This document shows positions 24,102 through 64,000 of a DNA stretch of 64,000 nt, piece by piece. Made by a program: the position numbers and the translations under genes. The DNA lies in IMG/VR virus record IMGVR_UViG_3300035698_035310, positions 295,045-359,044 of that record; one strand, written 5' to 3'. The notes beneath the pieces are model-generated. The model saw only the letters and a program-made list of their open reading frames with translations, ran no database searches and had not been told where the DNA came from. Within the stretch, counting starts at the first letter, position 1, and each line of letters begins with the position of its first letter.

Positions 24102-24166
24102 AAAATAAAACCAATGCAATAATGCATTAGGTATTACATAAACTTCAATCCCAAGGAGGGTTAGAA

Positions 24167-25219: not shown

Positions 25220-25220
25220 T

Positions 25221-48485: not shown

Positions 48486-48486
48486 T

Positions 48487-48933: not shown

Positions 48934-49022
48934 CATGCATCAATTTACAAAACAAACCCAAATAATTTTCAACCCATGATATCATTTTTAACAAGATGTT
49001 ATTCAACAAACAGAGAAGAAAC

Positions 49023-49886
49023 ATGAAAAAATATTTAGAAGCATTACAAGACATAATGGATAACGGCGTAGACCGAAATGACCGCACAGGCGTTGGCACA
49101 CGTTCAGTATTTACACAACAGTTACGATTTAACCTAAATGATGGATTTCCCGCTGTAACAACCAAAAAACTGGCTTGGAAGGGCGTTGTGTCAGAATTGC
49201 TATGGATGATAGAAGGTTCTGGTGATGAACGTAGATTAGCGGAGATACGTTATGGTAAAGACCGTTCAGAACTTGATGGTAAAACTACTATTTGGACTGC
49301 GAATGCACAAGCAGATTATTGGAAAGATAAAGCAAAGTATGATGGTGATTTGGGCAGAGTGTACGGAGTGCAATGGAGAAATTGGAAATCGCCACAATTT
49401 GATTCAGTTGAAACGACAGACCAGCTAGCTGATGTCATTCAACGTATAAAAGATAAGCCATGGGATAGACGACATGTTATAACAGCATGGAATCCTGGTG
49501 AAACCGACCAAATGGCATTACCGCCATGTCATATGATATTTCAATTTTATGTAGCAGATGGTAAACTTTCATGCCATATGTTCCAGAGAAGTTGTGACAT
49601 GCTGCTCGGAATCCCATTTAATATCGCATCCTATGCCCTTTTAACACATTTAGTGGCACAAGTATGTGATCTCGGCGTGGGTGAAGTTGTGTTAACATTA
49701 GGCGATGCGCATATTTATAATAATCATTTCGACCAAGTCAAAGAACAACTTAGTAGAACACCAGGACATTTACCTTCGTTGGTGTTGAACGAAACAATTA
49801 AAAACATCGACGATTTTACAATGGAAGATATACATTTAGAAAATTACAATCCACAAGAAGCAATAAAAGCACCTATGGCTGTTTAG
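49023..49886 (+). CDS. thyA: Thymidylate synthase
   Basis: DRTGVGT, TTKK, GRVYG.QWR, MALPPCH, QRSCD..LG.PFN, GDAHIY and terminal APMAV. Confidence 0.97.
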   Translation: MKKYLEALQDIMDNGVDRNDRTGVGTRSVFTQQLRFNLNDGFPAVTTKKLAWKGVVSELLWMIEGSGDERRLAEIRYGKDRSELDGKTTIWTANAQADYWKDKAKYDGDLGRVYGVQWRNWKSPQFDSVETTDQLADVIQRIKDKPWDRRHVITAWNPGETDQMALPPCHMIFQFYVADGKLSCHMFQRSCDMLLGIPFNIASYALLTHLVAQVCDLGVGEVVLTLGDAHIYNNHFDQVKEQLSRTPGHLPSLVLNETIKNIDDFTMEDIHLENYNPQEAIKAPMAV

Positions 49887-50757
49887 GTTCAAACCAAAAA
49901 CCAAGGTCGCGATATGATTTACCTATATTATCACGACCTTGGTTTTCTTTCAAATAGCGAGATTTACTCGTTGCTTGTTTTACTATAATATTATCACAAT
50001 TCAAACACCACCTATGAATAGTAGCAGATAACATATATTCATGTGCTTGTTGTGCTTGGCTTGATGAAGGAAAAACACCCCAAGGTGTATAATAATATCC
50101 CATAAATCTATAAGAATTTTCACCAGTTACTTTTTCAATAGATTCTTTTGATTTGATAACACCAGTGCTTAATGCTCGCAATTTATGCAATGTTTTTTTT
50201 GTATGTTTCTTGCCATAAAATGGATTATTTTTACCTGTTCTATCGCGACATTCGCCACATACATTACTACAAGTCTGTATGCTGTTTTTATTGCAAGATG
50301 GGCATATTTTATAACTAATACCACCATCACGCCAGTTGGGATTATTTTTCCCATATCTCGCCCATCGTTCTTGTTTTTCTTCATCAGACATTGCATCCAA
50401 TATTTTTTGTTGCGCAACAACTCTGCGTTTAATAATATTTTCTCTATCAGGATGATTAGTTAGATTATCACCACCACCGGCTGCTCCAATATTATATCCA
50501 CCAATATTTTCATCTATATATTTTTGTTCGATTTCAAATAACATTTCTTCATCACATTCTTCAATATATTCAAATATGAATACATTAGAACCATTTTTAT
50601 TCCATGACCGCTGTAAATATATATTATGATGATTATTATTTTTCAAACGATTTTTATGACTAACCCAACGCTTATAAATATTGACAGATGACCCATAATA
50701 AGCTTTACCATTGACGTTATTTCTGATACGATAAATACCACAGTTAAAAGATTTCAT
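49873..50757 (-). mobile_element. Free-standing GIY-YIG homing endonuclease with NUMOD3-like motifs
   Basis: GIYRIRN..NGKAYYGSS, EQKYID..GYNI and NPFYGKKHT; overlaps the thyA 3' end in antisense. Confidence 0.9.
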
Positions 50758-50909: not shown

Positions 50910-51623
50910 ATGACAAATACTACAAAGTTATTAATGATACATGTATTAGCGCACATAATGCTAATACCAATGTTTTTATATGGCGAAATGTGGATGTTTA
51001 TTGCGGCGTTTTTTTGGTGGCAGTTTATAGCAGCATCCTCTATTACTTCTGGATATCATAGATATTTTTCACATAAAAATTTTAAAACTGGAAAATGGTA
51101 TGAGTGGTATAGTCAGTATTTGGGTATATTTTCTAATGCTGGACCTGTTCTTACATGGGCATCGGTTCATAGAATGCATCATGCCAATAGCGACAATGAA
51201 CTCGACCCACATAGCCCAAAACATAAAGGATTTTGGTATGCATTTTTTAATTTGTGGGGATATGATGTTCATATACCAAGAAAATATCTAAAAGGTTTGA
51301 TACAAAACAAAAGTGTCAGAGTTTTTCACAAATATTATTTTTTAATCGTCGCAGCAACTATTATGATGTTGGGTATAATTAATTTTAATTTGTTATTATT
51401 TGGTTTTTTCTTTCCTGTTATATGTGGATTTTGGGGTTTTGGTATGGTTAATGCGTACACACATAGAAAAGGTTATGCTACAAATAGTGCACTTGCTAAT
51501 ATATTAACTGCTGGTGAAGGATGGCATTTAAACCACCACAACGATGGTAGCAATTGGCGTATCGGAAAGAAATGGTGGGAAATAGATACAGGAGCATGGT
51601 TTATATGGGCAATAAAGTATTAA
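50910..51623 (+). CDS. Membrane fatty acid desaturase (delta-9 type)
   Basis: His boxes HRYFSH, HRMHH..SD..DPHSP and GEGWHLNHH; transmembrane segments. Confidence 0.9.
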   Translation: MTNTTKLLMIHVLAHIMLIPMFLYGEMWMFIAAFFWWQFIAASSITSGYHRYFSHKNFKTGKWYEWYSQYLGIFSNAGPVLTWASVHRMHHANSDNELDPHSPKHKGFWYAFFNLWGYDVHIPRKYLKGLIQNKSVRVFHKYYFLIVAATIMMLGIINFNLLLFGFFFPVICGFWGFGMVNAYTHRKGYATNSALANILTAGEGWHLNHHNDGSNWRIGKKWWEIDTGAWFIWAIKY

Positions 51624-53491
51624 TATCAGTCCCGCCGTTATTGCATAAGTCTGTATATTTGCCATACATATGGGGCAGACTTAAAACATATGCTGATTGT
51701 GATTATGAAAATGATTTATCCGATATAGATTGGCTCGATCCATTATTTTTACACGAAACACCGGACCAATTACCAGAATGCGACATTCTTGGTTTAAGTT
51801 GTTATGTATGGAACTGGGATAAAAATTTAGAAATAGCAAAAACAATTAAAGAAAATAATCCAAATTGTTTTATAATCGCCAGTGGTCCACATGTTCCATA
51901 TAAAAATTCAAATTTCTTTGAAGAATTTCCTCAAATAGATGCAATATGCTACAGCGAAGGCGAACGAGTATTTTCAGAATTTTTATATAATTACACAAAC
52001 GATATAGATTACGACATAGATGGTTTGTTATTAAAAACTAATCCTACCAAATCATTACCTAATGTTCCAAAATTGTCATTAGATGATTTAACTTCGCCAT
52101 GGATTCATTGCGATGAATCATTCAGAAGATTTGATGCAGAATTAAGAATATTGGATAAGCGCGTCAATATCATCATTGAAACAAATCGTGGGTGTCCATA
52201 CAAGTGTGCGTTTTGTGATTGGGGATCAGCCACAAATTCTAAAATTAAAAAATTCAACAAACGCAACATATTCGACGAAATTGATTTATTATGCAAATAT
52301 GACCCAGAAATAGTGTTTATAGCAGATGCAAATTTTGGTATATTGGAAGTTGATTTAGAATATATAAAACGATTTGTTGAAAATAAAACCCGTTTCGATA
52401 TGAGACGCATGCAAGTCAATGTATGTATCGCAAAAAACAAAAAAGATATAGCCAATGAATGTTTGAAATTACTGTATGAAAATGAAATGCTGGTTAATGC
52501 ACAAATTTCATTTCAACACACAGACGACGAAGTATTGGATATAATGGATAGAAGTAACATAAAAGTGTTAAGTTCAATCGAAGAAGTCAAAGAAAATTAT
52601 AAAAATGGCATACCGAGTGCAGGAGTATTGATATTAGGAAATCCTGGTGATACTATGGTTAAACTGAAAAAAGCATTCAATGATTTATTGTGTTTAGGAT
52701 TTCATGATGAAATCAGATTGCACGATTTTATGTTACTGCCAAATGCACCTGCTAGCGATCCGGCATATATTGAAAAATGGAAAATTGGATATATTGAAAA
52801 AATGTATCAAGAAACGCCAGACAGAACGCCGTTTAAAACTAAATTTTTATGCGAATCTTTTAGTTACACAAAAAAAGATTACATAGAAATGCAATTATAT
52901 AGTTCATTTATTCAAAGCATGCATAATTTATCGATATTCAAATTCGTTGCAATGTTCGCGCATCATTCACACAACGTCGATTATAATACATTTTATGATC
53001 AAGTAATTAAAATACCTGCAATACGAAAAATATTGGATGTAGTCGAAGATGACTTGAATGAATATATGTATGGCGATAAACAGACTAAATTTATAACATA
53101 TAACAACAGATCATTTTCGTATGAAAATTATATTTTCTTGAAAGCATTGGAAAATATTGATGAAATATATGACAGTTTCGAGTTATATGGTTCCGATATT
53201 ATAAAATTTCAAAAAGAAATATTAGTTAACGGATTACCAAAAAATGATTTCGAATTGGATTTCGATTATAAAGAATATTTCACCAAAATATATAATCTTC
53301 CAGTAAATGAACGTGGAAATTTTTTTCCTATAAAAAGGAAAACAAAATATAAATTCAAACATTATAATGTAGGACCATATGAAAATATAAACACAAAAGG
53401 GTTCACCATAAAAGATGTGATTAACAAAATTTTAAATAAAACACCAAATTATAGACACAAAATAACATATTATGAGAATATTATAAAATGA
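51605..53491 (+). CDS. B12-binding-domain radical SAM enzyme
   Basis: LGLSCYVWN, SGPH, EGE, ETNRGCPYKCAFCDW and DANFG; start approximate (ATG 51596 or 51605). Confidence 0.85.
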   Translation: MGNKVLISVPPLLHKSVYLPYIWGRLKTYADCDYENDLSDIDWLDPLFLHETPDQLPECDILGLSCYVWNWDKNLEIAKTIKENNPNCFIIASGPHVPYKNSNFFEEFPQIDAICYSEGERVFSEFLYNYTNDIDYDIDGLLLKTNPTKSLPNVPKLSLDDLTSPWIHCDESFRRFDAELRILDKRVNIIIETNRGCPYKCAFCDWGSATNSKIKKFNKRNIFDEIDLLCKYDPEIVFIADANFGILEVDLEYIKRFVENKTRFDMRRMQVNVCIAKNKKDIANECLKLLYENEMLVNAQISFQHTDDEVLDIMDRSNIKVLSSIEEVKENYKNGIPSAGVLILGNPGDTMVKLKKAFNDLLCLGFHDEIRLHDFMLLPNAPASDPAYIEKWKIGYIEKMYQETPDRTPFKTKFLCESFSYTKKDYIEMQLYSSFIQSMHNLSIFKFVAMFAHHSHNVDYNTFYDQVIKIPAIRKILDVVEDDLNEYMYGDKQTKFITYNNRSFSYENYIFLKALENIDEIYDSFELYGSDIIKFQKEILVNGLPKNDFELDFDYKEYFTKIYNLPVNERGNFFPIKRKTKYKFKHYNVGPYENINTKGFTIKDVINKILNKTPNYRHKITYYENIIK

Positions 53492-54126
53492 CATACCCAA
53501 CAAACATCGATATTGTAAATCTAAATGAATTCGGTGTTGATAAGTTTAAAAATATATTATTACAATTATCAACCGAATGCGCCGACAAAAATAGAGATTG
53601 GTTTGATCCAGATAATAATTGGAGTTTGATACATCAATTCGCTAAATATGATTGGTGTTTTGCATTACACGACGATCAATTAGTGGCGTTTTCTGCTATA
53701 CAAAAATATAATTTCGGTGTAAGAGTTTTAACCAGAACATTTTACATGCCGGTTTTTAGAAAATCCAGCTTGAAAGTTAATATGAAATACACAATGGATG
53801 AAATCACTCCAGCGATGAAAATGTTACAATATCAACTTAATTCATTAAAAAATAGCGATGTTTCTTTAGCATTTATCAGCATGGAATATCCAGAAAGACG
53901 GACGGCACTTGAGACATTTCGTGATAAGTTAAATCATCATTATGATAACAATTGGACTATTCCTGAAAATATGTATTTAACATGTCCCGATCCTGAAAGT
54001 TTTTCGTGTTGGCAGAACATATGCTATACCGAATTAAAACCAAATTCATTTTTTAATGATTGGGGTAACATAACAGTAGACGAATGGAGGAATAGATATG
54101 GAAACGCACGAAAGACACTTGACTGA
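53488..54126 (+). CDS. Hypothetical protein (possibly GNAT-like)
   Basis: LVAFSAI...VRVLTRTFY.P.FR pattern; weak. Confidence 0.45.
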   Translation: MTYPTNIDIVNLNEFGVDKFKNILLQLSTECADKNRDWFDPDNNWSLIHQFAKYDWCFALHDDQLVAFSAIQKYNFGVRVLTRTFYMPVFRKSSLKVNMKYTMDEITPAMKMLQYQLNSLKNSDVSLAFISMEYPERRTALETFRDKLNHHYDNNWTIPENMYLTCPDPESFSCWQNICYTELKPNSFFNDWGNITVDEWRNRYGNARKTLD

Positions 54127-54754
54127 TTCTGATGTAATACGTGAACGCGTTAAAGGTGATAATGGGCCACGAAGACATGAAGTGGTCACATTTGAAAAAC
54201 TATCAGAAGTTCCCAGAGACGTGATCGATGAAATACATCAAGTATTGAGCAATTATCGAAAAAACGATTTGGTTTCAGATAGGCATCCAATAAGTGTTAA
54301 TTGCAAAATAGCACAAGAATTTAAAAAAGAAAACGGATATAAACAAATATTACTACAAGGACATTTAGGTGATGAAGGAATAGAAGAAAGCCAGTATACT
54401 GAATGGTTTGACATGGGAACTGATAATATACAAAAATATTTAACTGCTACATTTGGAAAGGTGTTTAGAGCAAGAATAAGTGTGTGTCCTGCCGGTGAAG
54501 AACTAAATTGGCATATAGATACAGATACGTCTAAAATGTGTCGAATACAAATATGTGTGCAAGACAAAGAATCTTATTTTGAGTTCAAAGTGCGTGGCGT
54601 GGAATCATCCAATCGCATGGAAGAGAACAACTTGTACTTCATAAATACTGGATGGACACATCGTGTAAGAAATGTATCTGATATAGATCGAATTGTTCTA
54701 TTAGCAGGCGTGTATTTTGATGACGTTCCAAATAATGAAAAATTGAGAGTTTAG
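54098..54754 (+). CDS. Aspartyl/asparaginyl beta-hydroxylase-like 2OG-Fe(II) oxygenase
   Basis: R.R....WHID...YFINTGWTHRV.N....R. Confidence 0.75.
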   Translation: METHERHLTDSDVIRERVKGDNGPRRHEVVTFEKLSEVPRDVIDEIHQVLSNYRKNDLVSDRHPISVNCKIAQEFKKENGYKQILLQGHLGDEGIEESQYTEWFDMGTDNIQKYLTATFGKVFRARISVCPAGEELNWHIDTDTSKMCRIQICVQDKESYFEFKVRGVESSNRMEENNLYFINTGWTHRVRNVSDIDRIVLLAGVYFDDVPNNEKLRV

Positions 54755-54755
54755 T

Positions 54756-55454
54756 ATGCACGACTTTATGCCAATAGACGTTGCCTTAAATTACGAAAAA
54801 CATCACATGGTCGATTTTTTTAATAAACGATGTGTGCGCGGCTCTATATGGTGGGATATGGTTATAGTTCGATCAGTAGAAAAAATGAGTGATACCGAAT
54901 CGGTTAAAGTAAAATGGAATGAATCATATAAGTGGATTTGGGATGAAGAATTTGAAAACAAATTTCCATCATTGATAGATGATTTATATAATAAATTACC
55001 TTTTAGATTTATAAGCAGTGTGCTATTGCTTAGAAATTTCGACGTTGTTCATCCACATTGTGATATTTCCATCAATGAAAAAGAAAATGACAATATTCGT
55101 TTGGCTAAAAACGACCTTGGTAGCATGGAATCAAGCATGTATAGAATTGTAATAGATGGTTCTATAAATAATTCATTTTTTTTAAGTGATAAATTGGTAG
55201 GTGATGATACGGGACGCAAATGGGTTGGCATGGATGATATAACCCCCGGTGTCGATTATAACGTCAAATTTGTTAGTATGCCACCAGACACCAATATATT
55301 CGCCCTAACGGCGTTTAATGCTACACACGGATCAGTAATTCCAGATTCACCAAAAATAATTATGGCAGTGCATGGATTTTTAGATGAAGCACGACATTCA
55401 TCCCTATTAACACAAAGTTATGACAAATATAAATCATATGGAATAACTTATTAA
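54756..55454 (+). CDS. Probable 2OG-Fe(II)/cupin-fold oxygenase
   Basis: PHCD...THG...K facial-triad-like pattern. Confidence 0.5.
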   Translation: MHDFMPIDVALNYEKHHMVDFFNKRCVRGSIWWDMVIVRSVEKMSDTESVKVKWNESYKWIWDEEFENKFPSLIDDLYNKLPFRFISSVLLLRNFDVVHPHCDISINEKENDNIRLAKNDLGSMESSMYRIVIDGSINNSFFLSDKLVGDDTGRKWVGMDDITPGVDYNVKFVSMPPDTNIFALTAFNATHGSVIPDSPKIIMAVHGFLDEARHSSLLTQSYDKYKSYGITY

Positions 55455-56290
55455 TGTATACACTTTTTAGCACACCAAGAACAGGAAGCATTTTAGCATC
55501 TGGATTGTTATGGTTATATTTACGGAACAAATACAAATATAATTCATATATAATAGAAATGTTTAATCAAAATCATTATAATGTGTGGCACGATGATAAT
55601 ATTAAAGATGGGATATTATTAAGTAGGCATAATCATTCAATCAAAGTGAAAAATTCATATAAATTAAAATTTAAATTATCACATGGTACAATAATTCAAT
55701 ACAAAGATTATGACGATATTCGATATTTAGACGAATCTGAAATAATTGAAGAAGATTTATACCGTCTCGATATACTTAAGCAAGCCAGCAAAAATAATGA
55801 TTATTTTCTTAATAATCATGCGACGCCGTTGGGTGAAAATGTTTTTAAATATTTAACCACATTAGATGTTATATGTATAGAGCGCAAAGATAAATTTGAA
55901 CAAATTATGAGTAATTGTATAGCGCATCACACCAAACAATATTGGTGTAAAGATAACTCGTCTATTATAATACACGAAAAAGATAGCATTCAAGTTGACG
56001 AGAAATTCTTTAAAAATACATTAAAGAGATATGAAACTTACACACATCGAAAAAAAATGTTAATCGACCCTATAACGATATATTATGAAGATATAAATGA
56101 TATGAAATCATATTTAGAGTTTGGTGAATTAGTTGGATTTAAAGACTATGATAAATATGTAACCATCGACGAAATTGATGATATTGTGGGTGTTAAACAA
56201 AATCCCGATGATAAATTGAAGTATTTTAAAAATAAAAATCAAATGATAAGTTGGTTCGAGGAGTGGAATGAGCACATTACTGTTACCTGA
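55454..56290 (+). CDS. Sulfotransferase-like protein
   Basis: TPRTGS (5'-PSB), ERKDKFEQ..S (3'-PB) and IYYED. Confidence 0.65.
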   Translation: MYTLFSTPRTGSILASGLLWLYLRNKYKYNSYIIEMFNQNHYNVWHDDNIKDGILLSRHNHSIKVKNSYKLKFKLSHGTIIQYKDYDDIRYLDESEIIEEDLYRLDILKQASKNNDYFLNNHATPLGENVFKYLTTLDVICIERKDKFEQIMSNCIAHHTKQYWCKDNSSIIIHEKDSIQVDEKFFKNTLKRYETYTHRKKMLIDPITIYYEDINDMKSYLEFGELVGFKDYDKYVTIDEIDDIVGVKQNPDDKLKYFKNKNQMISWFEEWNEHITVT

Positions 56291-56810
56291 AATTAAATAC
56301 AATAAACGCGAACTGAAAGAATTTGTAATGCATTGTGTTAAAAATAATAAACCAATAACAAATGTAGATGATTCTTATATCGTATATGACTCAGATTTTA
56401 ATGCTACAGCATATACTGCCATTAGAAATCAAATTTCATTAAAAGGTCATATCAATTTTAAAATTGTTTATCTCAAAAAAGGTATTAATTTTTTACCTCA
56501 TATCGACAACACATCAAACGGATTGACGTGTAAAATAATATTTCCTATAACTGGTGATTTTGAAGTTTCACCAATAGATATATATAATCCCACTAAAAAA
56601 AATAAATCAGGGAAAGCGATCTCTGAAACCGATGCTGGTGAGAAAATAGGAAGTATAGTATATCGTTGTCCTATTTTATTAGACACAACCATTGTTCATG
56701 GTGTTGATAATAGTTCTGGTGGCGATAGAATAGTATTGAGTATGTGTTTTCATAATACAAGTTTTAATGATTTAGCAAAAATGCATTATTCAAACAATTT
56801 GATTGTTTAA
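56268..56810 (+). CDS. 2OG-Fe(II) oxygenase-like protein
   Basis: PHID...LLDTT..HGVDN....R..LS. Confidence 0.65.
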   Translation: MSTLLLPEIKYNKRELKEFVMHCVKNNKPITNVDDSYIVYDSDFNATAYTAIRNQISLKGHINFKIVYLKKGINFLPHIDNTSNGLTCKIIFPITGDFEVSPIDIYNPTKKNKSGKAISETDAGEKIGSIVYRCPILLDTTIVHGVDNSSGGDRIVLSMCFHNTSFNDLAKMHYSNNLIV

Positions 56811-57481
56811 TATTCACCAAACGCCCAATATTTCTCTCTACACCACCAACATTTTTTACACGTTTCTGTAAAATTATTTGTTACATCAGAATGACCTTCA
56901 CATGATCTCGTTATTGGAAATAGATCATACATGAGATCATATTCATCATATAAATATGCTATAAATTTTTTATCTACATTTCTAAATGGAAAATATATAG
57001 GAGTTATATCATTCCATATATACCAATTGTTATGCTTATGTTCACCGACATCGCGTATAAGTTCTCTACCTTTTTTTAATTCTTCTGGTATATCTACTGG
57101 ATTTGCACTTAATCCAGTGATAACCATATCTATCATATCACTATCTAATAATTTCTTTTCAAAATTTCTAAGATACTCTAATTTTTGTGTTTCATGAAAA
57201 TATGAAATATGATGTGATATAATATTATTAGGTATCAATTTTTTTATTTTATCAACAACGTCAACTGAACGAAAATATGTCCATCTTCCCTTAAGATCAT
57301 TTACGCATGTAAGAATAACCAATTCAATATCTCGATTGTTTTCAACTATATATTTGGTCAAAATATATAATAAAATCGAACTATCTGCACCACCACTCAA
57401 ATTTACTGCTATTTTTTTATATTTTTCAGGTATGTTGAAATTTATTTCTTGATTGTCGTGTTTTAATATTAATTCTTTCAT
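56807..57481 (-). CDS. QueC-like PP-loop ATPase
   Basis: LSGGADS, PF...K, TRSC and CKKCWWCREK. Confidence 0.7.
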   Translation of the reverse strand: MKELILKHDNQEINFNIPEKYKKIAVNLSGGADSSILLYILTKYIVENNRDIELVILTCVNDLKGRWTYFRSVDVVDKIKKLIPNNIISHHISYFHETQKLEYLRNFEKKLLDSDMIDMVITGLSANPVDIPEELKKGRELIRDVGEHKHNNWYIWNDITPIYFPFRNVDKKFIAYLYDEYDLMYDLFPITRSCEGHSDVTNNFTETCKKCWWCREKYWAFGEY

Positions 57482-58027
57482 TTACAATATAGTTCCAACT
57501 ATATGTACGCGCTCGACGTCTACGCTACCATTAAATACCGTATGTGGTAATGTTGTATCAACTATAAAAGAATTTCCATCGGAGGGGAGGTGAAATGCAC
57601 GATCTTCTACAACCATTTTACAGTTTTCATCTGTAATAATGGGAAGATGTATTCGTTTATGTGAATCAGCGTGCCACGATAAACATTTTTTTCTATTTAA
57701 TTTCATCAATCTAACCCTTCCCAATGTCAATCCATAGTCATTTATCCAGCAATTGTATATATTATAAAAATATGAATTATGTAAATTTATATTAAATTCA
57801 CTATAGTCGCTTTCTTTATATACGACAGTTTTGGATATTTTTATACCATTTTCAAAATCACCTTCGTAGAATAACGACCCAGTTCCTTCATAATATGGAT
57901 TTGTACATCCTATTTTATTTGTTAAACATATTTGATTGCGAGTATGGAATGGTGCATTCAATAATAAATTGTTTAATGATTTGTTAATTTCAACCATATC
58001 AAAATTTGTTGGTAGTATATCATACAT
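57482..58027 (-). CDS. Aspartyl/asparaginyl beta-hydroxylase-like oxygenase
   Basis: GRVRLM...SWHAD...RIHLPIIT...DTTLPHT.FN....R.H. Confidence 0.75.
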   Translation of the reverse strand: MYDILPTNFDMVEINKSLNNLLLNAPFHTRNQICLTNKIGCTNPYYEGTGSLFYEGDFENGIKISKTVVYKESDYSEFNINLHNSYFYNIYNCWINDYGLTLGRVRLMKLNRKKCLSWHADSHKRIHLPIITDENCKMVVEDRAFHLPSDGNSFIVDTTLPHTVFNGSVDVERVHIVGTIL

Positions 58028-58128
58028 TTATAGTTGTCCTATACATATAAAAAGAGTTGACATTATTACTATTCGTGATATTATATCACAATACAACAAT
58101 ATTTATCAATATTTAAAAGGATTTTAAC

Positions 58129-58902
58129 ATGATTTATAATCGTTTTTTCGCGTCTGTGATCACCATGTTTATGCTTTCTGGGTGCGTCACAAATTCTGGC
58201 GGATTTGGTTCATTCTCAAAAGGGGATTTGAATAAAAAATCATATGGTCATACCGAAGTTCCTGATCCAACAGGGTTTGCTCCAACAAAAATGGTTCATC
58301 GTTTCGAAGTGCGGGATGGTGATTGCGGTGTAAGCAGTAAAGGAAGCAGTGATTGTAATCGTGGGAGTGAACGGGCTGAAATGAAGGAAAACAGTCCATC
58401 CCATTATGGCGAATCTTGGTATGGATGGTCTATTTATTTCCCGAAGGATTATGTAAGTTTGATACATTCTGGTGTCACGGTGGCGCAATTCAAACCATAC
58501 AGCAGAAAGCCATTGCTAACATTTGGTGATCATTTTGAGACGCTTGTAGTAAACAGATATGAAGGCGTTCCTAATGCGGTAAGACAACAAAAATCACTTG
58601 AGCGCTACGAACTTATTGCCACTGAAGATTTAAGGGGAAAATGGCACAAAATCGAAATGAATATTAAATGGTCATCCGATGATGATGGTTTTTATAAAAT
58701 TTGGGTCAATGGGAAACTCAAAGTCGACTACAAAGGTGTCACAAAAGCAGGAAGACCATATCTTAAATATGGAATTTATCGAAACAATTTGCATAAATAT
58801 AAATTTCATGCCGGTGTAAAAATTATACCAACGCAAATTTTGATGTATTCAAATGTCAAAAAAAGTGACACACGGGAAGGTCTGTTGCCTACGGTAGAAT
58901 AA
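58129..58902 (+). CDS. Lipoprotein with polysaccharide lyase (heparin lyase I-like) jelly-roll domain
   Basis: Lipobox LSGC; RFEVR.GDC, ERAE, WYGWSIYFP, G.W.....KWS...G...W.NG and YLKYGIYR; own TTGACA promoter at 58057. Confidence 0.75.
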   Translation: MIYNRFFASVITMFMLSGCVTNSGGFGSFSKGDLNKKSYGHTEVPDPTGFAPTKMVHRFEVRDGDCGVSSKGSSDCNRGSERAEMKENSPSHYGESWYGWSIYFPKDYVSLIHSGVTVAQFKPYSRKPLLTFGDHFETLVVNRYEGVPNAVRQQKSLERYELIATEDLRGKWHKIEMNIKWSSDDDGFYKIWVNGKLKVDYKGVTKAGRPYLKYGIYRNNLHKYKFHAGVKIIPTQILMYSNVKKSDTREGLLPTVE

Positions 58903-58908
58903 TCTTTT

Positions 58909-59877
58909 TTAGTTTGTATAATCCATTAATTTTTTCTGACCATTTGGCAATTTATGATATAATGGCTGTATCTCTAATTGAAAATGTGGAAAATTATCAT
59001 TAATAGATTTTGATATTATAGCAATTTCATCCGTTTTTTCTGGAAGATGCGCAACTTTAATTACAATATATTTAGCATCAGGCGATCTATGCTTGGACAT
59101 ATATTCTAATTTTTTATACAATGCATCCCATTTGGTAAATTCAAAATGCACACTTAATCGGAGTCCACATATCTCACTCAATTCAGTCAAATATTCTTTG
59201 TTTTTTGTACCATTGGTATTAACATGCATCATTAAATGTTGCTCCTCACCAATGAATTTATCATGCATTGTTTTAACATATTTTAAAAAATCAGGATTTA
59301 TTGTCGGCTCTCCTCCAGTATAAACAATATCTATATTCATATTTTCTGGTATTTGTGAAAAAAGATTATTTGTGCCATCTATTAATTGATCATATTTAAA
59401 ATGTGGGCTAAAGTTATCGTGAACGGTATCTGGGCAATACGAACAATCAAAATTACATCTTTTTCCAATATTCCAATTGATTCGAAAATTATTATCATCA
59501 CTCAATTCATCAACTGACGAGACCGCCACAACATCGTTTATATTAAAATTATCAGTGATATCAGTATTCAATAATGGCATATATTTAACATCTTTGACTT
59601 TTTCTAAAACAATATCGTCGGTGCAATGACAAACATCAAAATCACATGTTATCCATTCAGTTCTTAATTTAAAATTTGTATATATATTTCCAATTGATCC
59701 GCCTTGTTTGCATACCGATCCAAACACTGAACCCTTAGAATTGATGCTAATAGTTCTTCTGCCAGCACTACACGACCAACCTTTCCATTTATTATAACCG
59801 TTATTTTTAATATCATCCAATGATAAAAATTCTGATTTTCCATTACTGTCTATGAATTTTACTCGTTTATGTGCCAT
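58909..59877 (-). CDS. Radical SAM protein with N-terminal SPASM/Twitch-like domain
   Basis: CSAG...I...G.V...C...GNI...C....C.C..D precedes RCNFDCSYC, TGGEPT and TNG. Confidence 0.8.
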   Translation of the reverse strand: MAHKRVKFIDSNGKSEFLSLDDIKNNGYNKWKGWSCSAGRRTISINSKGSVFGSVCKQGGSIGNIYTNFKLRTEWITCDFDVCHCTDDIVLEKVKDVKYMPLLNTDITDNFNINDVVAVSSVDELSDDNNFRINWNIGKRCNFDCSYCPDTVHDNFSPHFKYDQLIDGTNNLFSQIPENMNIDIVYTGGEPTINPDFLKYVKTMHDKFIGEEQHLMMHVNTNGTKNKEYLTELSEICGLRLSVHFEFTKWDALYKKLEYMSKHRSPDAKYIVIKVAHLPEKTDEIAIISKSINDNFPHFQLEIQPLYHKLPNGQKKLMDYTN

Positions 59878-60731
59878 TATATAATTCCTATTAATTTTTT
59901 ATTTTCAGATATAGCGGTTATTATATCGATCATATTTGAGGTATCAAACATTATTGCAACATATACCTGTCCCAATCTACATTTTGGATCGGTTGTGTCA
60001 TATCCCAAATTACTATACCATTCATGTATTAATTGTACCCTGTTCGCGTGCCATTCGTTATTATAAGGTCCAAAATCCGCAACAAATGATGCTGAATATG
60101 TTTCTAACGGTCTTGGTGTTGTTACAACATCTTGTCTTCTATAACACTCTATATAATCTTTGCCGACTTGTGAATAATTTAATTTGATCCCGCCAGCTAT
60201 ATAAAGCGGCGTAAACATATCATTATAATCATCTATTATATTTTTCTTTTCAAATTGAAATGGTTCATCACCATGCTTTAAAAATCTAACTCTTATTCTA
60301 CTATCTGATTGTTTTCGTGTTTGTGTTATAATGGCATTTTCTAATTCATGTATGAAAATATTTAAATCGTTCATTGCTTGAACTAAATCATGATCTATTC
60401 GATAATTCTTATCTACTACTATATTTTCATATATAAAATGCAAATTGTTTAAACAATTCTGTGTAAATATATCATCTATATATTCAAACAATACATTATC
60501 AAATGTTTTAGGTTTTTTACTTTTTATTATATCTATCGCTACAAGTAAATTTTGTTGAATATTTATAATTTTGGCAGGATTATAAAATCCAGAATAAGTA
60601 TCTTCGATGAAATAATCATTATTGTATATTCGATTTTCAAGTAAATTAAACCAACTATAAGCAAGTTCATTATCATATAGTAAATATTTTACCTCTGTTC
60701 CATTTTCAAAAATTAAACTAAATTTTTTCAT
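59877..60731 (-). CDS. Hypothetical protein
   Basis: LNNLH..YE...LN..IH.LE and LNYSQVGK; in operon with radical SAM genes. Confidence 0.7.
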   Translation of the reverse strand: MKKFSLIFENGTEVKYLLYDNELAYSWFNLLENRIYNNDYFIEDTYSGFYNPAKIINIQQNLLVAIDIIKSKKPKTFDNVLFEYIDDIFTQNCLNNLHFIYENIVVDKNYRIDHDLVQAMNDLNIFIHELENAIITQTRKQSDSRIRVRFLKHGDEPFQFEKKNIIDDYNDMFTPLYIAGGIKLNYSQVGKDYIECYRRQDVVTTPRPLETYSASFVADFGPYNNEWHANRVQLIHEWYSNLGYDTTDPKCRLGQVYVAIMFDTSNMIDIITAISENKKLIGII

Positions 60732-61810
60732 ATCTTAACACCGCATTGAAATGTGCATTTTTTAATAGTGTTGTGTGGAGTTTTCCACGATTCTTCCAAT
60801 AATTCACATAATTTTATATAATGAGAATACACGTGGTCAAAATCATATTTGGTTGAATCTAAATTGTCTATTCCTATCACGTTATAAATTTCAGTAAAAT
60901 CAACAGGTAATGGTTTATTATCATAAATAAATTCCGAAAGTGTAGCCCCATGCCAACAGCATGGTACTATATGACCCGTTGAATTATAAAACATTTTATC
61001 TATTTTCGTTTTTGATATATTATCATATGATTTACAAATTATATCAATATTGTTTTCTTTTTCATAAGTTTCAAGTTGTTTTAAAATAGTATCGGTACTT
61101 GTCGAGGTTTTATCATCGTGCACATTTATCAAAAATGTTTCTCTTATCGTTCCTTTATTATCATACTTATATTTATAATCACCGTCGGCTATTTCTAACG
61201 TGTATTCTTCATTTTTCCATTCATACGTAAGTGTGGGTGATCGACTAAATCTATCACTATTAAATGATTTAAAATCAAAAAATCCTAATTTTTCAGCCAT
61301 CAATTTTGCTTCTTCGAGTTGATGTTGATTGTGTTTAAATATTATAAATTGCCATCTTGCTTTACCGCCAGAACTTATAAATGCTTCTGCATTTTTTACT
61401 ATTTTATCAAAATTGCAATTTCTTCTATACATTTCTAATGTTTCTTGTGTAGAACCATCTAATCCAAATGTACAAACACAACCCAATGAACCCAATCTCT
61501 CCCACCACGATGTAGATCGTAAACTACCATTTGTTGCTATTCTTATTTTAAGTTTGTCATTTAAAGAACGCATGTATTCTACAATTTCTAAAAAATCACT
61601 TGATGCAACAGGATCGCTAACATTTCCACAAAACAAAACACTTTTCAAATTTTTTAAAAATTCTACAGGATAAAACTCTTTAAATGCTGAAATAGACTGG
61701 TCGGTTGACGACCATTTTGATGTATCGGTTCTTGCTCTAAAACACTGAGGGCAATATGCATTACATTTATTAGATAATTCAAAATGAATTTCTTTTACTG
61801 AATATTCCAT
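60728..61810 (-). CDS. Radical SAM protein with C-terminal SPASM/Twitch-like domain
   Basis: CNAYCPQC.R, FCGN..DP, TNGS, F.LDG, F.HNQHQ and PCCW. Confidence 0.85.
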   Translation of the reverse strand: MEYSVKEIHFELSNKCNAYCPQCFRARTDTSKWSSTDQSISAFKEFYPVEFLKNLKSVLFCGNVSDPVASSDFLEIVEYMRSLNDKLKIRIATNGSLRSTSWWERLGSLGCVCTFGLDGSTQETLEMYRRNCNFDKIVKNAEAFISSGGKARWQFIIFKHNQHQLEEAKLMAEKLGFFDFKSFNSDRFSRSPTLTYEWKNEEYTLEIADGDYKYKYDNKGTIRETFLINVHDDKTSTSTDTILKQLETYEKENNIDIICKSYDNISKTKIDKMFYNSTGHIVPCCWHGATLSEFIYDNKPLPVDFTEIYNVIGIDNLDSTKYDFDHVYSHYIKLCELLEESWKTPHNTIKKCTFQCGVKI

Positions 61811-62500
61811 TTATTTTCTTCCTATTAACATAAATCTATCATATTTTTCAAGATTTAAATGCCCTTCATATAATATATCATCCATTGGCGACTGCTGCTT
61901 AAATGAATACAAGCTATCGACACAATTAATATGCCCTTTACCATCGTAAAAATTATTCGATTGTAATATCAACAACGCGCCATCGGGTATTTTTTCAAAC
62001 CATTTATCATAATTGTCAATATGCTCACAACTGGTGTTTATAACACAATCTGGAATATCATATAAATTACAATCACTACCGTCAGCGCGAATTGTGCTGT
62101 AATCCATGCCATTATAATCTATGTCATGCATATCCATAGTGGAAGCCTTAAACGTCCATTCATCCATTACCCATTTTCTATTAATGGTGTCTGCTATGTT
62201 AGCACACTGCGTATCTATATCAAAAGAGCGTATTTTATTTATTTTCAATTTATTGGATTCAAACATCATGGCGGCTAATGATCCATACCAACCACCCACT
62301 ATATATACAACACCAAGGTCTAAATCTAAACTAATCAATTCATCAATTAGCCACAATTTGCTTTTTATTTGTCCTTGCGTAAATACATCATTAAAGTCTA
62401 TATCTGGAAAGTTAATTAATGCTCGGCGCAAATGTGCTATAAGATCACTTTCGTATATTGTTTGTAATCCATTTAATATTATATCGATATCATTATACAT
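61811..62500 (-). CDS. Class I SAM-dependent methyltransferase-like protein
   Basis: QIKSK.WL, GGWYG, SFDID, INTSCEH and LQSNN. Confidence 0.7.
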   Translation of the reverse strand: MYNDIDIILNGLQTIYESDLIAHLRRALINFPDIDFNDVFTQGQIKSKLWLIDELISLDLDLGVVYIVGGWYGSLAAMMFESNKLKINKIRSFDIDTQCANIADTINRKWVMDEWTFKASTMDMHDIDYNGMDYSTIRADGSDCNLYDIPDCVINTSCEHIDNYDKWFEKIPDGALLILQSNNFYDGKGHINCVDSLYSFKQQSPMDDILYEGHLNLEKYDRFMLIGRK

Positions 62501-63398
62501 CTTTCCACAGTCCTAAATCTTTAAGATATTGTTCATCTGCCAAGTGTGGCAGCATTAAACCCAATCTAGATGGATTATTCTGTATCTGTCTTGCAAACAG
62601 GCTTCCATTGTTATCTAATGTGATAACTGGCATATCCAGTTTATCCCTAAGATATGAACCATATATAGAAAACTCCGCGATGGTAAACTTATGCCACGTC
62701 GATTTCCACATTTTATCAAACCATTCATAATCAGAAATATGCGTGATATCTAAATCATTAACACATGTTTCATAACAACCGACTCTTGCGCCCATCATTG
62801 TCCAGAATCCATTGTCTATATCAATGCCTATATTCATCCACGACAGCAACCGATTGTAATTTCCTATCCACACATCAGTTCTAGGGTTTTCAACCACCAC
62901 ACCATCGTTTAAGCCCATCCTAACACCCTCTCTGAACCCCGTTCTGAATGCTTGTAGCGGCGTGGTGTTAATATGCGTGGTTGAACTAACTGCATTCATT
63001 TGAAAATAAGGAACAGTCCAACAAAAATCAGTTCCGTTGTTTTTTTCATGACTTTTAATATTTAACATTGTATGCTTGGGCCACAATTTTGCACCACCAT
63101 TACCATACTGCAATCCGTTAACTGAATTTATAGCAGACCAACTATGAACATAATTTGGATTTATATCATCCAACTCTTGACCAAAAAATTCATCATCTAC
63201 TTTGGTGTCACCGTCTATTACGAAAAAATGTTCCGAGTATGCAATTTTCGCTGCTTCTTTGTGTGCTTTATCGATACCTTTTACACCATGCACACGTTTT
63301 GCGTGTTTTACTAATGTTAATAAGTGCTCATAATTTTCATCAGCATTTGGTTCATCATATGATATGAATATCACATCAAATTCATAAGCGTTTGTCAT
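62493..63398 (-). CDS. GT-A fold glycosyltransferase-like protein
   Basis: FISYDEPNADENY, VHGVKG...AH, IDGD (DxD), NGL.YGNGG.K and AFR.GFRE. Confidence 0.7.
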   Translation of the reverse strand: MTNAYEFDVIFISYDEPNADENYEHLLTLVKHAKRVHGVKGIDKAHKEAAKIAYSEHFFVIDGDTKVDDEFFGQELDDINPNYVHSWSAINSVNGLQYGNGGAKLWPKHTMLNIKSHEKNNGTDFCWTVPYFQMNAVSSTTHINTTPLQAFRTGFREGVRMGLNDGVVVENPRTDVWIGNYNRLLSWMNIGIDIDNGFWTMMGARVGCYETCVNDLDITHISDYEWFDKMWKSTWHKFTIAEFSIYGSYLRDKLDMPVITLDNNGSLFARQIQNNPSRLGLMLPHLADEQYLKDLGLWKDV

Positions 63399-64000
63399 AT
63401 TTTATACATTACCTTTTTTATAAATTCACTTTGTTCTGCGGTAAACAGTGCCGTTTCGATATCAAACATATCAAGCATTTCTTCACCACATGATTGTATA
63501 TTGCTCATAATATCATTGTGGTTAAGTTGTAAATCATAATATTCGCGACACACGCTAAAATCATTTATTATATTTAATTCTTCAACTTCTCGTTCAATCA
63601 ACTTATTTGAGTTACACGAACCGTGCATTACGCCCATTCTAGCACCCGCTATAGCATAATCACCAAAATCAACATCCATGCCAACACTTGTCCATATTTT
63701 AAGACGCGCTAATGTTTCTTCATTTTTTTGATTATCAATGACTGCACTAGATAATTTGGTACATTCTCTAAATCCACTTTTCCATGCATTAAACGGAGTT
63801 GTATTGAAATGGGTAGTGCTGGCTATTTCTTTATGTGATTTAAACCCACTAGATGCAGCCGCAGCACTCGTGCAAAAATCAACAGAATATTCTTTTATGT
63901 GCTCTACGTGATCAGTTGGAAATAATTTAACACCACCATATCCGTATTGCAATCCATTTACTGGATTATTGCAGCCCCATACATGAACGCGTCTATCATT
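63395..64000 (-). CDS. Paralogous glycosyltransferase-like protein (C-terminal part; starts beyond the window)
   Basis: NPVNGLQYGYGGVKL, FNTTPFNAWKSGFRE and GAR.G shared with 62493-63398. Confidence 0.7.
   Translation of the reverse strand, partial: NDRRVHVWGCNNPVNGLQYGYGGVKLFPTDHVEHIKEYSVDFCTSAAAASSGFKSHKEIASTTHFNTTPFNAWKSGFRECTKLSSAVIDNQKNEETLARLKIWTSVGMDVDFGDYAIAGARMGVMHGSCNSNKLIEREVEELNIINDFSVCREYYDLQLNHNDIMSNIQSCGEEMLDMFDIETALFTAEQSEFIKKVMYKI

What the first reader, a model, noticed from the sequence alone, without database searches (positions are those of the whole stretch)
50910..64000. 13-kb biosynthetic-like tailoring cluster in a phage
Two convergent arrays encode a desaturase, a B12-radical SAM, four 2OG-Fe/AspH-like oxygenases, a sulfotransferase, a QueC-like PP-loop ATPase, two more radical SAMs, a methyltransferase and two glycosyltransferase paralogs. 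No scaffold synthase or obvious precursor peptide is visible, and the other 7-deazaguanine genes (folE, queD, dpdA) are not in the window. Inference: a pathway decorating virion proteins, glycans, lipids or host surface rather than standard DNA modification; the product is unknown.
Basis: partly seen in the sequence, partly recalled or inferred. Interest (0 to 1): 0.6.

Follow-up and report, generated by a model that had tools for sequence, protein, structure and literature searches.

The report
Phage tail-fibre-linked glycan tailoring island
The flagged 13 kb is the outer part of a larger, widely conserved gene island that follows the tail-fibre genes of a roughly 570-kb salt-lake phage and encodes five glycosyltransferases plus many radical-SAM and other tailoring enzymes, most likely to build and decorate a sugar coat on the fibres or on the host surface.

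Summary
Window 50910-64000 carries 16 tightly packed genes.
- desaturase
- B12 radical SAM
- two to four AspH-like oxygenases
- Stf0/NodH-like sulfotransferase
- PP-loop ATPase
- two more radical SAMs
- class I methyltransferase
- two GT-A glycosyltransferase paralogs

The region is not self-contained, because the contig end cuts the last gene. A 570,549-bp assembly of the same phage shows the minus-strand array continuing upstream. It passes a third GTx, two more radical SAMs and two glycogenin-like GT8s, then four fibre-like paralogs and a giant virion protein.

The order fibre, c124, GT8a, GT8b, GTx, (rSAM), GTx, MT14, with a variable tail of rSAM/AspH/desaturase/PP-loop genes, recurs in:
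- the best 80 of at least 589 IMG/VR contigs
- Ralstonia jumbo phage RsoM2USA
- loosely, the "host recognition cluster" of Pelagibacter phage Mosig

Bdellovibrionota chromosomes carry GTx, MT14 and the three rSAM classes without fibre genes.

My best reading (about 0.4) is glycosylation and further tailoring of tail-fibre proteins. Host envelope remodelling is a serious rival (about 0.3). DNA hypermodification is unlikely. I rate it a new variant of a known kind.

The parts
50910..51623 (+). g01: membrane fatty-acid-desaturase-like di-iron enzyme (237 aa), the only protein of the set with transmembrane-like segments
   Evidence: His boxes HRYFSH, HRMHH and HLNHH. NCBIfam DesA family 2.4e-11. 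Hydrophobic stretches. Homologs lie next to GNAT-like, AspH-like and MT14 genes in L001, L008, L101, Mosig and 12 of 80 GTx loci.
51605..53491 (+). g02: class B (cobalamin-binding) radical SAM enzyme, probably a C-methyltransferase (628 aa by the public gene call)
   Evidence: PF02310 plus PF04055. NF033712 KedN5 family 8e-53, 180 bits, below the 700-bit cut-off. CPYKCAFC cluster motif. Eight viral loci hold relatives; two of them (L001, L008) also carry desaturase-like and g03-like genes.
53488..54126 (+). g03: GNAT-fold acyl/acetyltransferase-like protein (212 aa)
   Evidence: Atlas structure search gives TM 0.5-0.67 to GNAT clusters. It follows a desaturase-like gene in L001 and lies near two in L008. 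A GNAT-like gene follows a desaturase in L101.
54098..54754 (+). g04: AspH-like Fe(II)/2OG oxygenase (218 aa)
   Evidence: PF05118 1.9e-4, 21.7 bits against a 22.6-bit cut-off. Invariant HxD..H..R in alignment A3. 39% identical homolog in L001.
54756..55454 (+). g05: unknown family with an invariant HxD...H motif, a possible cupin oxygenase (232 aa)
   Evidence: 62 representatives in 1.84 billion proteins. Invariant H101, D103 and H191. hhalign to the AspH profile is not significant. No Pfam or PDB hit.
55454..56290 (+). g06: Stf0/NodH-like (carbohydrate-type) sulfotransferase (278 aa)
   Evidence: Atlas features 0.97 with 199 shared, structure TM 0.69 to Stf0 and NodH clusters. N-terminal TPRTGS resembles a PAPS-binding loop (the motif reading is from my own knowledge).
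56268..56810 (+). g07: probable AspH-like oxygenase (180 aa)
   Evidence: hhalign to A3: E 2.5e-4, probability 43%, with HID, H and DRI aligned to the catalytic columns.
56807..57481 (-). g08: PP-loop ATP pyrophosphatase with a C-terminal Cys cluster (224 aa), subfamily unassigned
   Evidence: SGGADSS motif. QueC 16.5 bits, under the cut-off. Weak NcsA, TilS and TtcA hits. phrog_1550 3e-6. Homologs in 4 of 80 GTx loci and in L120.
57482..58027 (-). g09: AspH-like Fe(II)/2OG oxygenase (181 aa), part of the recurrent string
   Evidence: PF05118 3.7e-8, over the cut-off. Homolog follows the twitch rSAM in L016. Present in 16 of 80 GTx loci, typically as MT14-AspH-DES.
58129..58902 (+). g10: exported polysaccharide-lyase-family lipoprotein (257 aa), a lineage-specific insert on the opposite strand
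   Evidence: PF14099 1.5e-30. LSGC lipobox. 0 of 80 GTx loci hold a homolog. A bidirectional promoter-like pair lies in the 101-nt gap, as consensus matches only.
58909..59877 (-). g11: radical SAM with an N-terminal twitch-like Cys domain (322 aa)
   Evidence: PF04055 1.5e-9. It is a circular permutant of the 316-aa rSAM upstream. Homologs in 8 of 80 loci and in Bdellovibrionota loci.
59877..60731 (-). g12: ORFan (284 aa)
   Evidence: No homolog by word search apart from itself. No Pfam, PHROG, NCBIfam or PDB hit.
60728..61810 (-). g13: radical SAM with a C-terminal Cys-rich (SPASM-like) region (360 aa)
   Evidence: PF04055 1.1e-9. Nearest NCBIfam families are SPASM maturases, all far below their cut-offs. 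The order GTx-MT14-g13 is repeated in L018 and L019, and GTx-g13 in L017.
61811..62500 (-). g14 (MT14): class I SAM-dependent methyltransferase (229 aa)
   Evidence: AF2 pLDDT 93. Foldseek 1e-7 to CFA synthase, RebM and NodS. More than 700 relatives at about 50% identity. Present in 47 of 80 GTx loci. Homologs in RsoM2USA and Mosig, annotated 'putative methyltransferase' in Mosig.
62493..63398 (-). g15 (GTx): GT-A fold glycosyltransferase of a family without a Pfam model (301 aa)
   Evidence: AF2 pLDDT 92. GT-A matches at Z 8-10 over residues 1-144. Invariant D62-x-D64. At least 840 relatives. At least 589 IMG/VR contigs.
63395..64000 (-). g16 (GTx paralog): cut by the end of the window and contig; the full gene is 278 aa
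   Evidence: 36% identical to g15. Full length in L009:9168-10004, with a weak PF00535 hit.

Best explanation
The region is the distal, variable part of a glycan-assembly and tailoring island appended to the tail-fibre genes of a roughly 570-kb myovirus-like phage.

Shown:
- The minus-strand array runs in one direction from a giant virion structural protein.
- It then passes fibre-family proteins, a ~120-aa protein (c124), two glycogenin-like GT8 transferases and three GT-A transferases of a new family (GTx).
- It continues through twitch/SPASM radical SAMs, a methyltransferase (g14), further radical SAMs (g13, g11), an AspH-like oxygenase (g09) and a PP-loop ATPase (g08).
- A second operon converges on it: desaturase-like, B12 radical SAM, GNAT-like, AspH-like (one firm, one probable, one possible), and a sulfotransferase.

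Inferred mechanism:
1. Late in infection the soluble transferases use host nucleotide sugars to put O-linked sugars on the Ser/Thr-rich fibre proteins. GT8 would start the chain and GTx would extend it.
2. The AspH-like enzymes hydroxylate fibre residues or sugars.
3. The new hydroxyls and sugars are then methylated (g14 on O or N, g02 on C), sulfated (g06), acylated (g03, with an acyl chain shaped by g01) and amidated (g08).
4. The radical SAMs oxidise, epimerise or rearrange them.

The result would be a lineage-specific decorated fibre surface that affects receptor binding, stability or recognition.
For: 1. Continuation and structural context: searches show 100% identity over 11.5 kb to a contig where the place is internal. 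One search gives the giant protein as phrog_10938 'virion structural protein' at 8e-113 and s194 as phrog_11259 at 1e-62. One search shows four fibre-like paralogs. One search gives them 20-24% Ser+Thr.
2. Collinear string: fibre-c124-GT8a-GT8b-GTx-..-MT14 occurs in 80 of 80 inspected IMG/VR loci to varying extent. Counts are GT8a 74, GT8b 63, s348 56, c124 49, MT14 47 and rSAM436 30. The same order occurs in Ralstonia phage RsoM2USA, downstream of its baseplate wedge and 2541-aa structural protein, and in L016 and L017.
3. Fibre identity: tail-collar (PF07484) proteins of ~700 aa lie about 8 kb upstream on the same strand in 3 of 5 relatives. They share their N-terminus with s348.
4. Enzyme identities: the GT8 profile hits only glycogenins in the PDB, at 2e-7. 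GTx has the GT-A fold.
5. Location of the enzymes: all enzymes except g01 lack membrane segments, and the genes I annotated in the island include no Wzx, Wzy or Gtr-type genes.
6. Sugar link in relatives: relatives add UDP-glucose dehydrogenase, CMP-sugar synthetase, dTDP-sugar isomerase, carbamoyltransferase, sugar aminotransferase and epimerase genes.
7. Published prediction: PMC2938197 predicted that beta-hydroxylase, sulfotransferase and acetyltransferase neighbourhoods modify co-encoded tail-collar or collagen-like proteins.
8. Experimental precedent: phage virion glycosylation is reported by Freeman 2023, as cited.
Against: - No direct evidence exists that any fibre is modified.
- The GTx-fibre complex prediction gave no verdict.
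- The enzyme core (GTx, MT14 and three rSAM classes) also occurs in Bdellovibrionota chromosomes without phage fibre genes, beside a separate QueC-like PP-loop gene and four GT2 genes. The unit can therefore serve a cellular glycan.
- GT8 enzymes are also typical LPS-core transferases.
- The published view of the analogous pelagimyophage island is host O-chain modification.
- A membrane desaturase and an exported polysaccharide lyase fit lipid or envelope chemistry better than fibre chemistry.
- No nucleotide-sugar genes were found in the 359 kb held.
- Late expression is inferred from gene order only.
Confidence: 0.4

Rival explanations
1. Host-envelope remodelling. The island rewrites the infected cell's LPS core, O-chain, lipid A or exopolysaccharide: GT8 and GTx add sugars, LpxO/AspH-like enzymes hydroxylate, and the desaturase, acyltransferase, methyltransferase and sulfotransferase decorate. 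This would block superinfection or stop progeny sticking to debris. It stays linked to the fibre genes because the receptor and the receptor-modifying enzymes must change together.
For: This is the published interpretation of the pelagimyophage host recognition cluster, with GT8 as the commonest family (PMC7029224). PF05118 also covers lipid hydroxylases such as LpxO (my own knowledge). g01 is a membrane desaturase, and relatives add KAS and multiple desaturases. g10 is an exported polysaccharide-lyase lipoprotein. The enzyme core occurs in Bdellovibrionota chromosomes beside four GT2 genes.
Against: The core string is collinear and 35-45% identical across soil, marine and salt-lake phages whose hosts must have very different surface glycans. 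A conserved acceptor such as the phage's own fibre fits that better. The genes I annotated in the island include no flippase, polymerase, ligase or Gtr-type membrane genes. The position inside a structural, probably late, operon is poor timing for exclusion. g10 is absent from all 80 related loci.
Confidence: 0.3
2. No single product. The region is a hypervariable dump of independent auxiliary genes: a cold-adaptive desaturase, assorted oxygenases, and rSAMs of unrelated function. They sit together only because this genome location tolerates insertions.
For: The distal content differs even in a 75%-identical relative, which has seven or more other rSAM genes after the conserved part. g10 and g12 are lineage-specific. 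The pelagimyophage paper calls the region hypervariable. The plus-strand array g05-g07 has no homolog in the 80 GTx loci.
Against: Sub-modules recur in the same order in unrelated contigs: DES-GNAT-AspH-MT14 in L001; GTx-MT14-AspH-DES in 12 of 80 loci; GTx-MT14-g13 in L018 and L019. Overlapping start and stop codons run through both arrays. The same enzyme set occurs in bacterial chromosomes.
Confidence: 0.13
3. A free glycolipid, lipo-oligosaccharide or other diffusible small molecule is made during infection. It would resemble a Nod factor in its tailoring logic (N-acyl, methyl, sulfate, carbamoyl) and would not be attached to virion or envelope.
For: g14 resembles NodS and g06 resembles NodH at fold level. 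Relatives carry a NodU-type carbamoyltransferase. The desaturase, GNAT-like and KAS genes in L101 point to a special acyl chain. g02 is nearest a natural-product sugar C-methyltransferase family.
Against: These are generic fold-level resemblances. No oligosaccharide synthase, NodA or NodC homolog, or exporter was found among the genes I annotated. The conserved linkage to fibre genes remains unexplained.
Confidence: 0.1
4. DNA hypermodification: a 7-deazaguanine-type pathway or a glycosylated base.
For: A PP-loop protein with a QueC-like C-terminal Cys motif and rSAMs with weak QueE-like scores. Phage glycosyltransferases often act on DNA. A thymidylate-synthase gene lies 1 kb upstream of the region.
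Against: g08 scores under the QueC cut-off, and other PP-loop families score as well. There is no TGT/DpdA in the 359 kb held. td is paired with DHFR and is 53% identical to ordinary phage thymidylate synthases. The transferases are anchored to fibre genes, not replication genes.
Confidence: 0.03

Closest known systems
Host recognition cluster (HRC) of pelagimyophages and cyanomyophages (Zaragoza-Solas et al. 2020, PMC7029224), for example Pelagibacter phage Mosig EXVC030M
   Same: An island inside the structural module next to tail-fibre genes and a giant baseplate protein. It holds GT8 glycosyltransferases, radical SAM cassettes, AspH-like, FA_desaturase-like, acetyltransferase and methyltransferase genes. 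Homologs of g01, g13 and g14 are present in Mosig.
   Different: This is a different phage lineage and size (about 570 kb against about 140 kb). Mosig has no GTx, GT8a/b or c124 homolog detectable at E 1e-3. Here the core string is collinear across hundreds of contigs rather than non-syntenic. The function of the HRC itself has never been tested.
Ralstonia jumbo phage RsoM2USA, ORF347-ORF361
   Same: Same order: giant structural protein, fibre-like, ~124-aa protein, two GT8-like, GTx, twitch rSAM, GTx, g14-like, at 24-42% identity. It lies downstream of the baseplate wedge and a virion protein seen by mass spectrometry.
   Different: It lacks the distal genes g01-g13 in that region. All of its genes there are annotated hypothetical. 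It is a soil host. It is the only isolate among 50,697 phage records with a GTx homolog.
Mycobacteriophage virion glycosylation (Freeman et al. 2023, cited)
   Same: Phage-encoded glycosyltransferases lie next to structural genes and decorate virion proteins. This is the mechanism I propose here.
   Different: The acceptors there are capsid and tail-tube C-termini. No radical SAM, AspH or sulfotransferase set is involved. Homology of the transferases was not tested here. Modification is experimentally shown there and not here.
Beta-hydroxylase, sulfotransferase and acetyltransferase neighbourhoods with tail-collar or collagen-like proteins (Iyer et al. 2010, PMC2938197)
   Same: AspH-type hydroxylases are co-encoded with a sulfotransferase, an acetyltransferase, a methyltransferase and a tail-fibre-family protein. 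The authors predicted hydroxylation followed by sulfation of the fibre-like protein.
   Different: Those are bacterial operons and the idea is a prediction only. No PAPS synthetase was found among the genes I annotated in the island. A Collar domain was shown in relatives' fibres but not in this phage's own fibre proteins.
Giant-virus glycan machinery (PBCV-1 A64R; Mimivirus fibril glycosylation)
   Same: Virus-encoded GT-A enzymes decorate virion surface proteins. A64R is among the structural matches of g15.
   Different: Eukaryotic viruses. The match is fold-level only (TM 0.2-0.4). The Mimivirus comparison rests on my own knowledge.

Membership tests
HRC-type island of T4-like marine myophages | Lies in the structural module, adjacent to tail-fibre genes and a giant baseplate (VrlC-type) protein | tested here: met
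   The giant protein hits phrog_10938 at 8e-113 and is followed by fibre-family genes and then the island. Homology to VrlC itself was not shown; there was no tblastn hit to Mosig VrlC at 1e-3.
HRC-type island of T4-like marine myophages | Contains GT8 glycosyltransferases and radical SAM cassettes | tested here: met
   The GT8a/b profile hits glycogenin at 2e-7. The island has six radical SAM genes in all.
HRC-type island of T4-like marine myophages | Non-syntenic and hypervariable between related phages | tested here: inconclusive
   The distal part is variable, but the proximal string is strongly collinear.
7-deazaguanine (QueC/QueE/DpdA) DNA modification | A QueC family member scoring above the curated cut-off | tested here: not met
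   PF06508 gives 16.5 bits against a 22-bit cut-off. TIGR00364 does not list g08.
7-deazaguanine (QueC/QueE/DpdA) DNA modification | A DpdA/TGT transglycosylase in the genome | tested here: not met
   PF01702 finds nothing in the 359 kb held. The other ~211 kb of the genome could not be searched.
RiPP biosynthetic cluster | A precursor peptide gene beside the rSAM/SPASM maturases | tested here: not met
   Intergenic gaps are 101 nt or less within the region. The only small ORF nearby (46 aa, outside the window) is a truncated copy of the s194 N-terminus.
KedN5-family cobalamin radical SAM C-methyltransferases (NF033712) | A score above the family cut-off of 700 bits | tested here: not met
   179.6 bits, covering residues 54-376 only. 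g02 is a class B rSAM by domain content but not a member of this family.
N-terminal twitch radical SAM (NF033640) | A score above the family cut-off of 170 bits | tested here: met
   The 436-aa rSAM just beyond the window scores 359.9 bits, 1.8e-107. g11 scores only 36 bits.
GT8 (glycogenin / LPS-core transferases) | N-terminal nucleotide-sugar binding region with DxD, recognisably similar to GT8 members | tested here: met
   All 19 PDB hits of profile A5 are glycogenin-1 or -2, at 2e-7 to 2e-6, over positions 4-107. D92 is nearly invariant and D94 invariant. No member reached Pfam PF01501.
Phage virion glycosylation system | Glycan mass on virion proteins that depends on the phage transferases | not testable with these tools
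   This needs proteomics of virions. The complex prediction gave no verdict.
AspH / Asp_Arg_Hydrox (PF05118) | A score over the Pfam cut-off plus the HxD...H iron triad | tested here: met
   g09 scores 33.8 bits against a 22.6-bit cut-off. g04 scores 21.7 bits, just under. The triad and Arg are invariant in A3. g07 is probable and g05 is not shown.

The most novel reading that the evidence does not exclude
GTx, MT14, three classes of twitch/SPASM radical SAM enzymes and usually a PP-loop ATPase form a self-contained, previously undescribed pathway. It would build a radical-tailored glycan, and it is shared by jumbo phages and predatory Bdellovibrionota. In phages the pathway would be wired to the tail-fibre genes so that the host-recognition fibres themselves carry this glycan. 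That would be the first enzymatically decorated receptor-binding apparatus in phages of Gram-negative bacteria, with radical SAM chemistry on a protein-linked sugar.
Probability: 0.15. Interest if true: 0.85.

Novelty: new variant of a known kind. Interest (0 to 1): 0.6.

Why it matters
Tail fibres decide which bacteria a phage can infect. If hundreds of large environmental phages enzymatically decorate their fibres, or systematically rewrite the host surface those fibres bind, then host range cannot be read from fibre sequence alone. Several enzyme families here also have no known substrate: GTx, the g14 methyltransferases, N-twitch radical SAMs and phage desaturase paralogs. One cultured phage, RsoM2USA, carries the core string, so the question can be tested directly.

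Tried and rejected
- Isolate phage searches: megablast of the 13 kb against isolate phages found nothing. tblastn of g02 found one weak, unannotated hit.
- PDB sequence searches: phmmer or profile searches for g15, g14, g06, g12, the GTx profile, the g14 profile, the g05 profile and the fibre-domain profile gave nothing usable.
- g12: no relatives found.
- g05: the Pfam tally over 35 relatives was empty.
- Single-protein IMG/VR scans: g15 and g06 found nothing, and g01 found one locus.
- Promoter and terminator consensus scan: no excess over shuffles. TATAAATA sites were not informative.
- Complex prediction of GTx with a fibre paralog: no verdict, so it is evidence neither for nor against binding.
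- Laying salt-lake runs on 56000-61900: this only showed the same phage, without differences, at low depth in other samples. No RNA run was available.
- Flagellin-glycosylation idea for the bacterial GTx copies: in the one genome where both positions could be compared (Roseibium), the flagellin genes lie about 450 kb from GTx.
- Rest of the 570-kb record: it could not be searched through a handle.
- Exact-protein look-up of the Roseibium GTx: failed.
- Circular joining of the 359-kb record: no terminal overlap, because the record is a cut of a larger contig.
No spliced model was involved.

Full report
**What is in the window**

Positions 50910-64000 hold 16 ORFs. They are packed with overlaps or gaps of -29 to +6 nt, except for a 101-nt gap before g10. 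A plus-strand array g01-g07 (50910-56810) converges on a minus-strand array (56807-64000). One plus-strand gene, g10, interrupts the minus array. G+C is 28-35%, slightly below the 36% of the genome. Upstream lie frd, an HNH gene, td and a GIY-YIG gene. Elsewhere the window carries phage genes such as a T4 Rnl1-type RNA ligase and a PNK/phosphatase.

**Gene identities**

- g01 has the three His boxes of membrane desaturases and matches the DesA family at 2.4e-11. A relative in L101 hits PF00487 at 9.5e-18.
- g02 has B12-binding and radical SAM domains. It is nearest the KedN5 C-methyltransferase family (8e-53) but far below its cut-off.
- g03 is GNAT-like by the Atlas structure search.
- g09 passes the Pfam AspH cut-off and g04 scores just under it. 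Both keep the HxD..H..R residues.
- g07 aligns to that profile with the catalytic residues in register (E 2.5e-4).
- g05 has only an invariant HxD..H motif.
- g06 is a Stf0/NodH-like sulfotransferase by Atlas features and structure.
- g08 is a PP-loop ATPase that does not reach the QueC cut-off.
- g10 is a PF14099 polysaccharide-lyase-family protein with a lipobox.
- g11 and g13 are radical SAM enzymes with Cys-rich auxiliary regions.
- g12 is an ORFan.
- g14 folds as a class I methyltransferase.
- g15 folds with pLDDT 92 as a GT-A domain plus a helical domain, with an invariant DxD motif.
- g16 is a paralog of g15, cut by the window end.

**The region is not the whole thing**

The 359-kb record is an IMG/VR "provirus" cut of a 570,750-bp JGI contig that ends inside g16. 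An ENA contig of 570,549 bp carries the same DNA internally, with 100% identity over 11.5 kb. The two assemblies are circular permutations of each other, so the genome is about 570 kb.

Reading on from g16 along the minus strand of the window, that contig gives, in order:
- the full g16 (278 aa)
- an N-twitch radical SAM (436 aa; NF033640, 360 bits, over its cut-off)
- a C-twitch radical SAM (316 aa), which is a circular permutant of g11
- a third GTx (343 aa)
- a 257-aa unknown
- two GT8-like genes, whose joint profile hits only glycogenins in the PDB (2e-7)
- a 124-aa protein (c124)
- four Ser/Thr-rich paralogs sharing a ~300-aa domain
- s348, s194 (phrog_11259) and a virion structural protein of more than 3446 aa (phrog_10938, 8e-113)

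**Conservation**

A GTx profile finds at least 589 IMG/VR contigs. In the best 80, the genes are collinear: GIANT, s194, s348 (one to four copies), FIB, c124, GT8a, GT8b, GTx, [rSAM436], GTx, MT14. The string then ends in either AspH-DES or combinations of rSAM13, rSAM436, rSAMtw and PP-loop genes.

The same order occurs elsewhere:
- Ralstonia jumbo phage RsoM2USA, downstream of its baseplate wedge and a 2541-aa virion protein. It is the only isolate with a GTx homolog.
- Contigs L016 and L017, and a 75%-identical relative whose distal part holds at least seven other radical SAM genes.
- In 3 of 5 relatives a ~700-aa tail-collar (PF07484) protein lies about 8 kb upstream on the same strand. 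It shares its N-terminus with s348.

The plus-strand sub-module also recurs:
- DES-GNAT-AspH-MT14 in L001
- B12 rSAM with two desaturase-like genes and a GNAT-like gene in L008
- seven desaturase paralogs with a KAS, a GNAT-like gene and a g14-like methyltransferase in L101

Relatives also add sugar-nucleotide enzymes: UDP-glucose dehydrogenase, CMP-sugar synthetase, dTDP-sugar isomerase, epimerase, sugar aminotransferase and carbamoyltransferase.

Pelagibacter phage Mosig has a looser analogue between its tail-fibre and VrlC/baseplate genes. This is the "host recognition cluster" described for pelagimyophages.

**Cellular copies**

GTx also occurs in bacterial assemblies. Some are phage contigs binned into MAGs. 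In Bdellovibrionota chromosomes, however, GTx, MT14, rSAM13, rSAM436 and rSAMtw sit beside a QueC-like PP-loop gene and four GT2 genes, without any fibre genes. Roseibium and its relatives carry GTx alone. In the Roseibium chromosome where both positions can be compared, flagellin genes are about 450 kb away.

**Interpretation**

The set is a coherent glycan-building and tailoring unit. Its fixed position after fibre genes across very different phages argues that in phages it serves the fibres:
- the enzymes are soluble
- no envelope-assembly genes were found among those I annotated
- GT8 is of the glycogenin type
- hydroxylase, sulfotransferase and acetyltransferase neighbourhoods have been predicted to modify tail-collar proteins

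I give this reading about 0.4. The published alternative is remodelling of host surface glycans. It is supported by the cellular copies, the membrane desaturase and the exported lyase, and I give it about 0.3. A grab-bag of unrelated auxiliary genes (0.13), a free glycolipid or metabolite (0.1) and DNA modification (0.03) follow. No TGT/DpdA is present in the 359 kb held, and td is an ordinary thymidylate synthase paired with DHFR.

**Limits**

- Nothing here shows a modified product.
- The time of expression is inferred from gene order only.
- The complex prediction gave no verdict.
- No RNA run holds the stretch.
- About 211 kb of the genome could not be searched.
- Several assignments (g03, g06, g07) are at fold or profile level only.

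**Novelty**

Islands of this kind next to fibre genes are described but uncharacterised. The newly described elements are:
- the collinear GT8-GTx-MT14-rSAM string
- the GTx family itself
- the presence of this unit in a ~570-kb phage and in predatory bacteria

Noticed in passing
window 23610-26845 (+): A run of NAD-related genes: Nudix hydrolase, NAD+ synthase NadE (2e-42) and NMN adenylyltransferase. An RlmN/Cfr-like radical SAM RNA methyltransferase (6e-21, below the family cut-offs) sits between them.
   Followed up: partly
whole record G000; window end at 64000: The 359-kb 'provirus' record is a cut of a ~570.6-kb genome. A JGI contig (570,750 bp) ends inside g16. An ENA contig (570,549 bp) is a circular permutation holding the same place internally. 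It comes from salt-lake metagenomes, and the same phage occurs without differences in several samples.
   Followed up: partly
L101:6614-19939 (IMGVR_UViG_3300023179_000086): A viral contig with seven FA_desaturase paralogs in 20 kb, together with a beta-ketoacyl synthase, a GNAT-like gene, a radical SAM, an APS-kinase-like P-loop protein and a g14-like methyltransferase.
   Followed up: partly
L136 / L172 (Halobacteriovoraceae MAG contig) and other Bdellovibrionota loci L112, L113, L126, L142, L144: Chromosomal clusters with GTx, MT14, three radical SAM classes, a QueC-like PP-loop gene, four GT2 genes and an amine-oxidase-like gene, but no phage structural genes.
   Followed up: partly
window 58909-59877 (-) and L011:15913-16863: Two radical SAM paralogs are circular permutants. 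The Cys-rich twitch-like domain is N-terminal in g11 and C-terminal in the 316-aa paralog.
   Followed up: no
window 47982-50757: frd, an HNH endonuclease, td and a GIY-YIG/NUMOD3 homing-endonuclease gene on the opposite strand. Two mobile endonuclease genes therefore flank thymidylate synthase.
   Followed up: no
L011:4172-4312: A 46-aa ORF whose residues 12-33 are 55% identical to the N-terminus of the following 194-aa structural protein. It is probably a remnant of a duplication, not a precursor peptide.
   Followed up: no
window 58027-58129: The only sizeable gap in the region carries back-to-back sigma-70-like matches (11 of 12 each, both with an extended -10 TG) facing g09 and g10. These are consensus matches only, and the region shows no excess over shuffles.
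   Followed up: no
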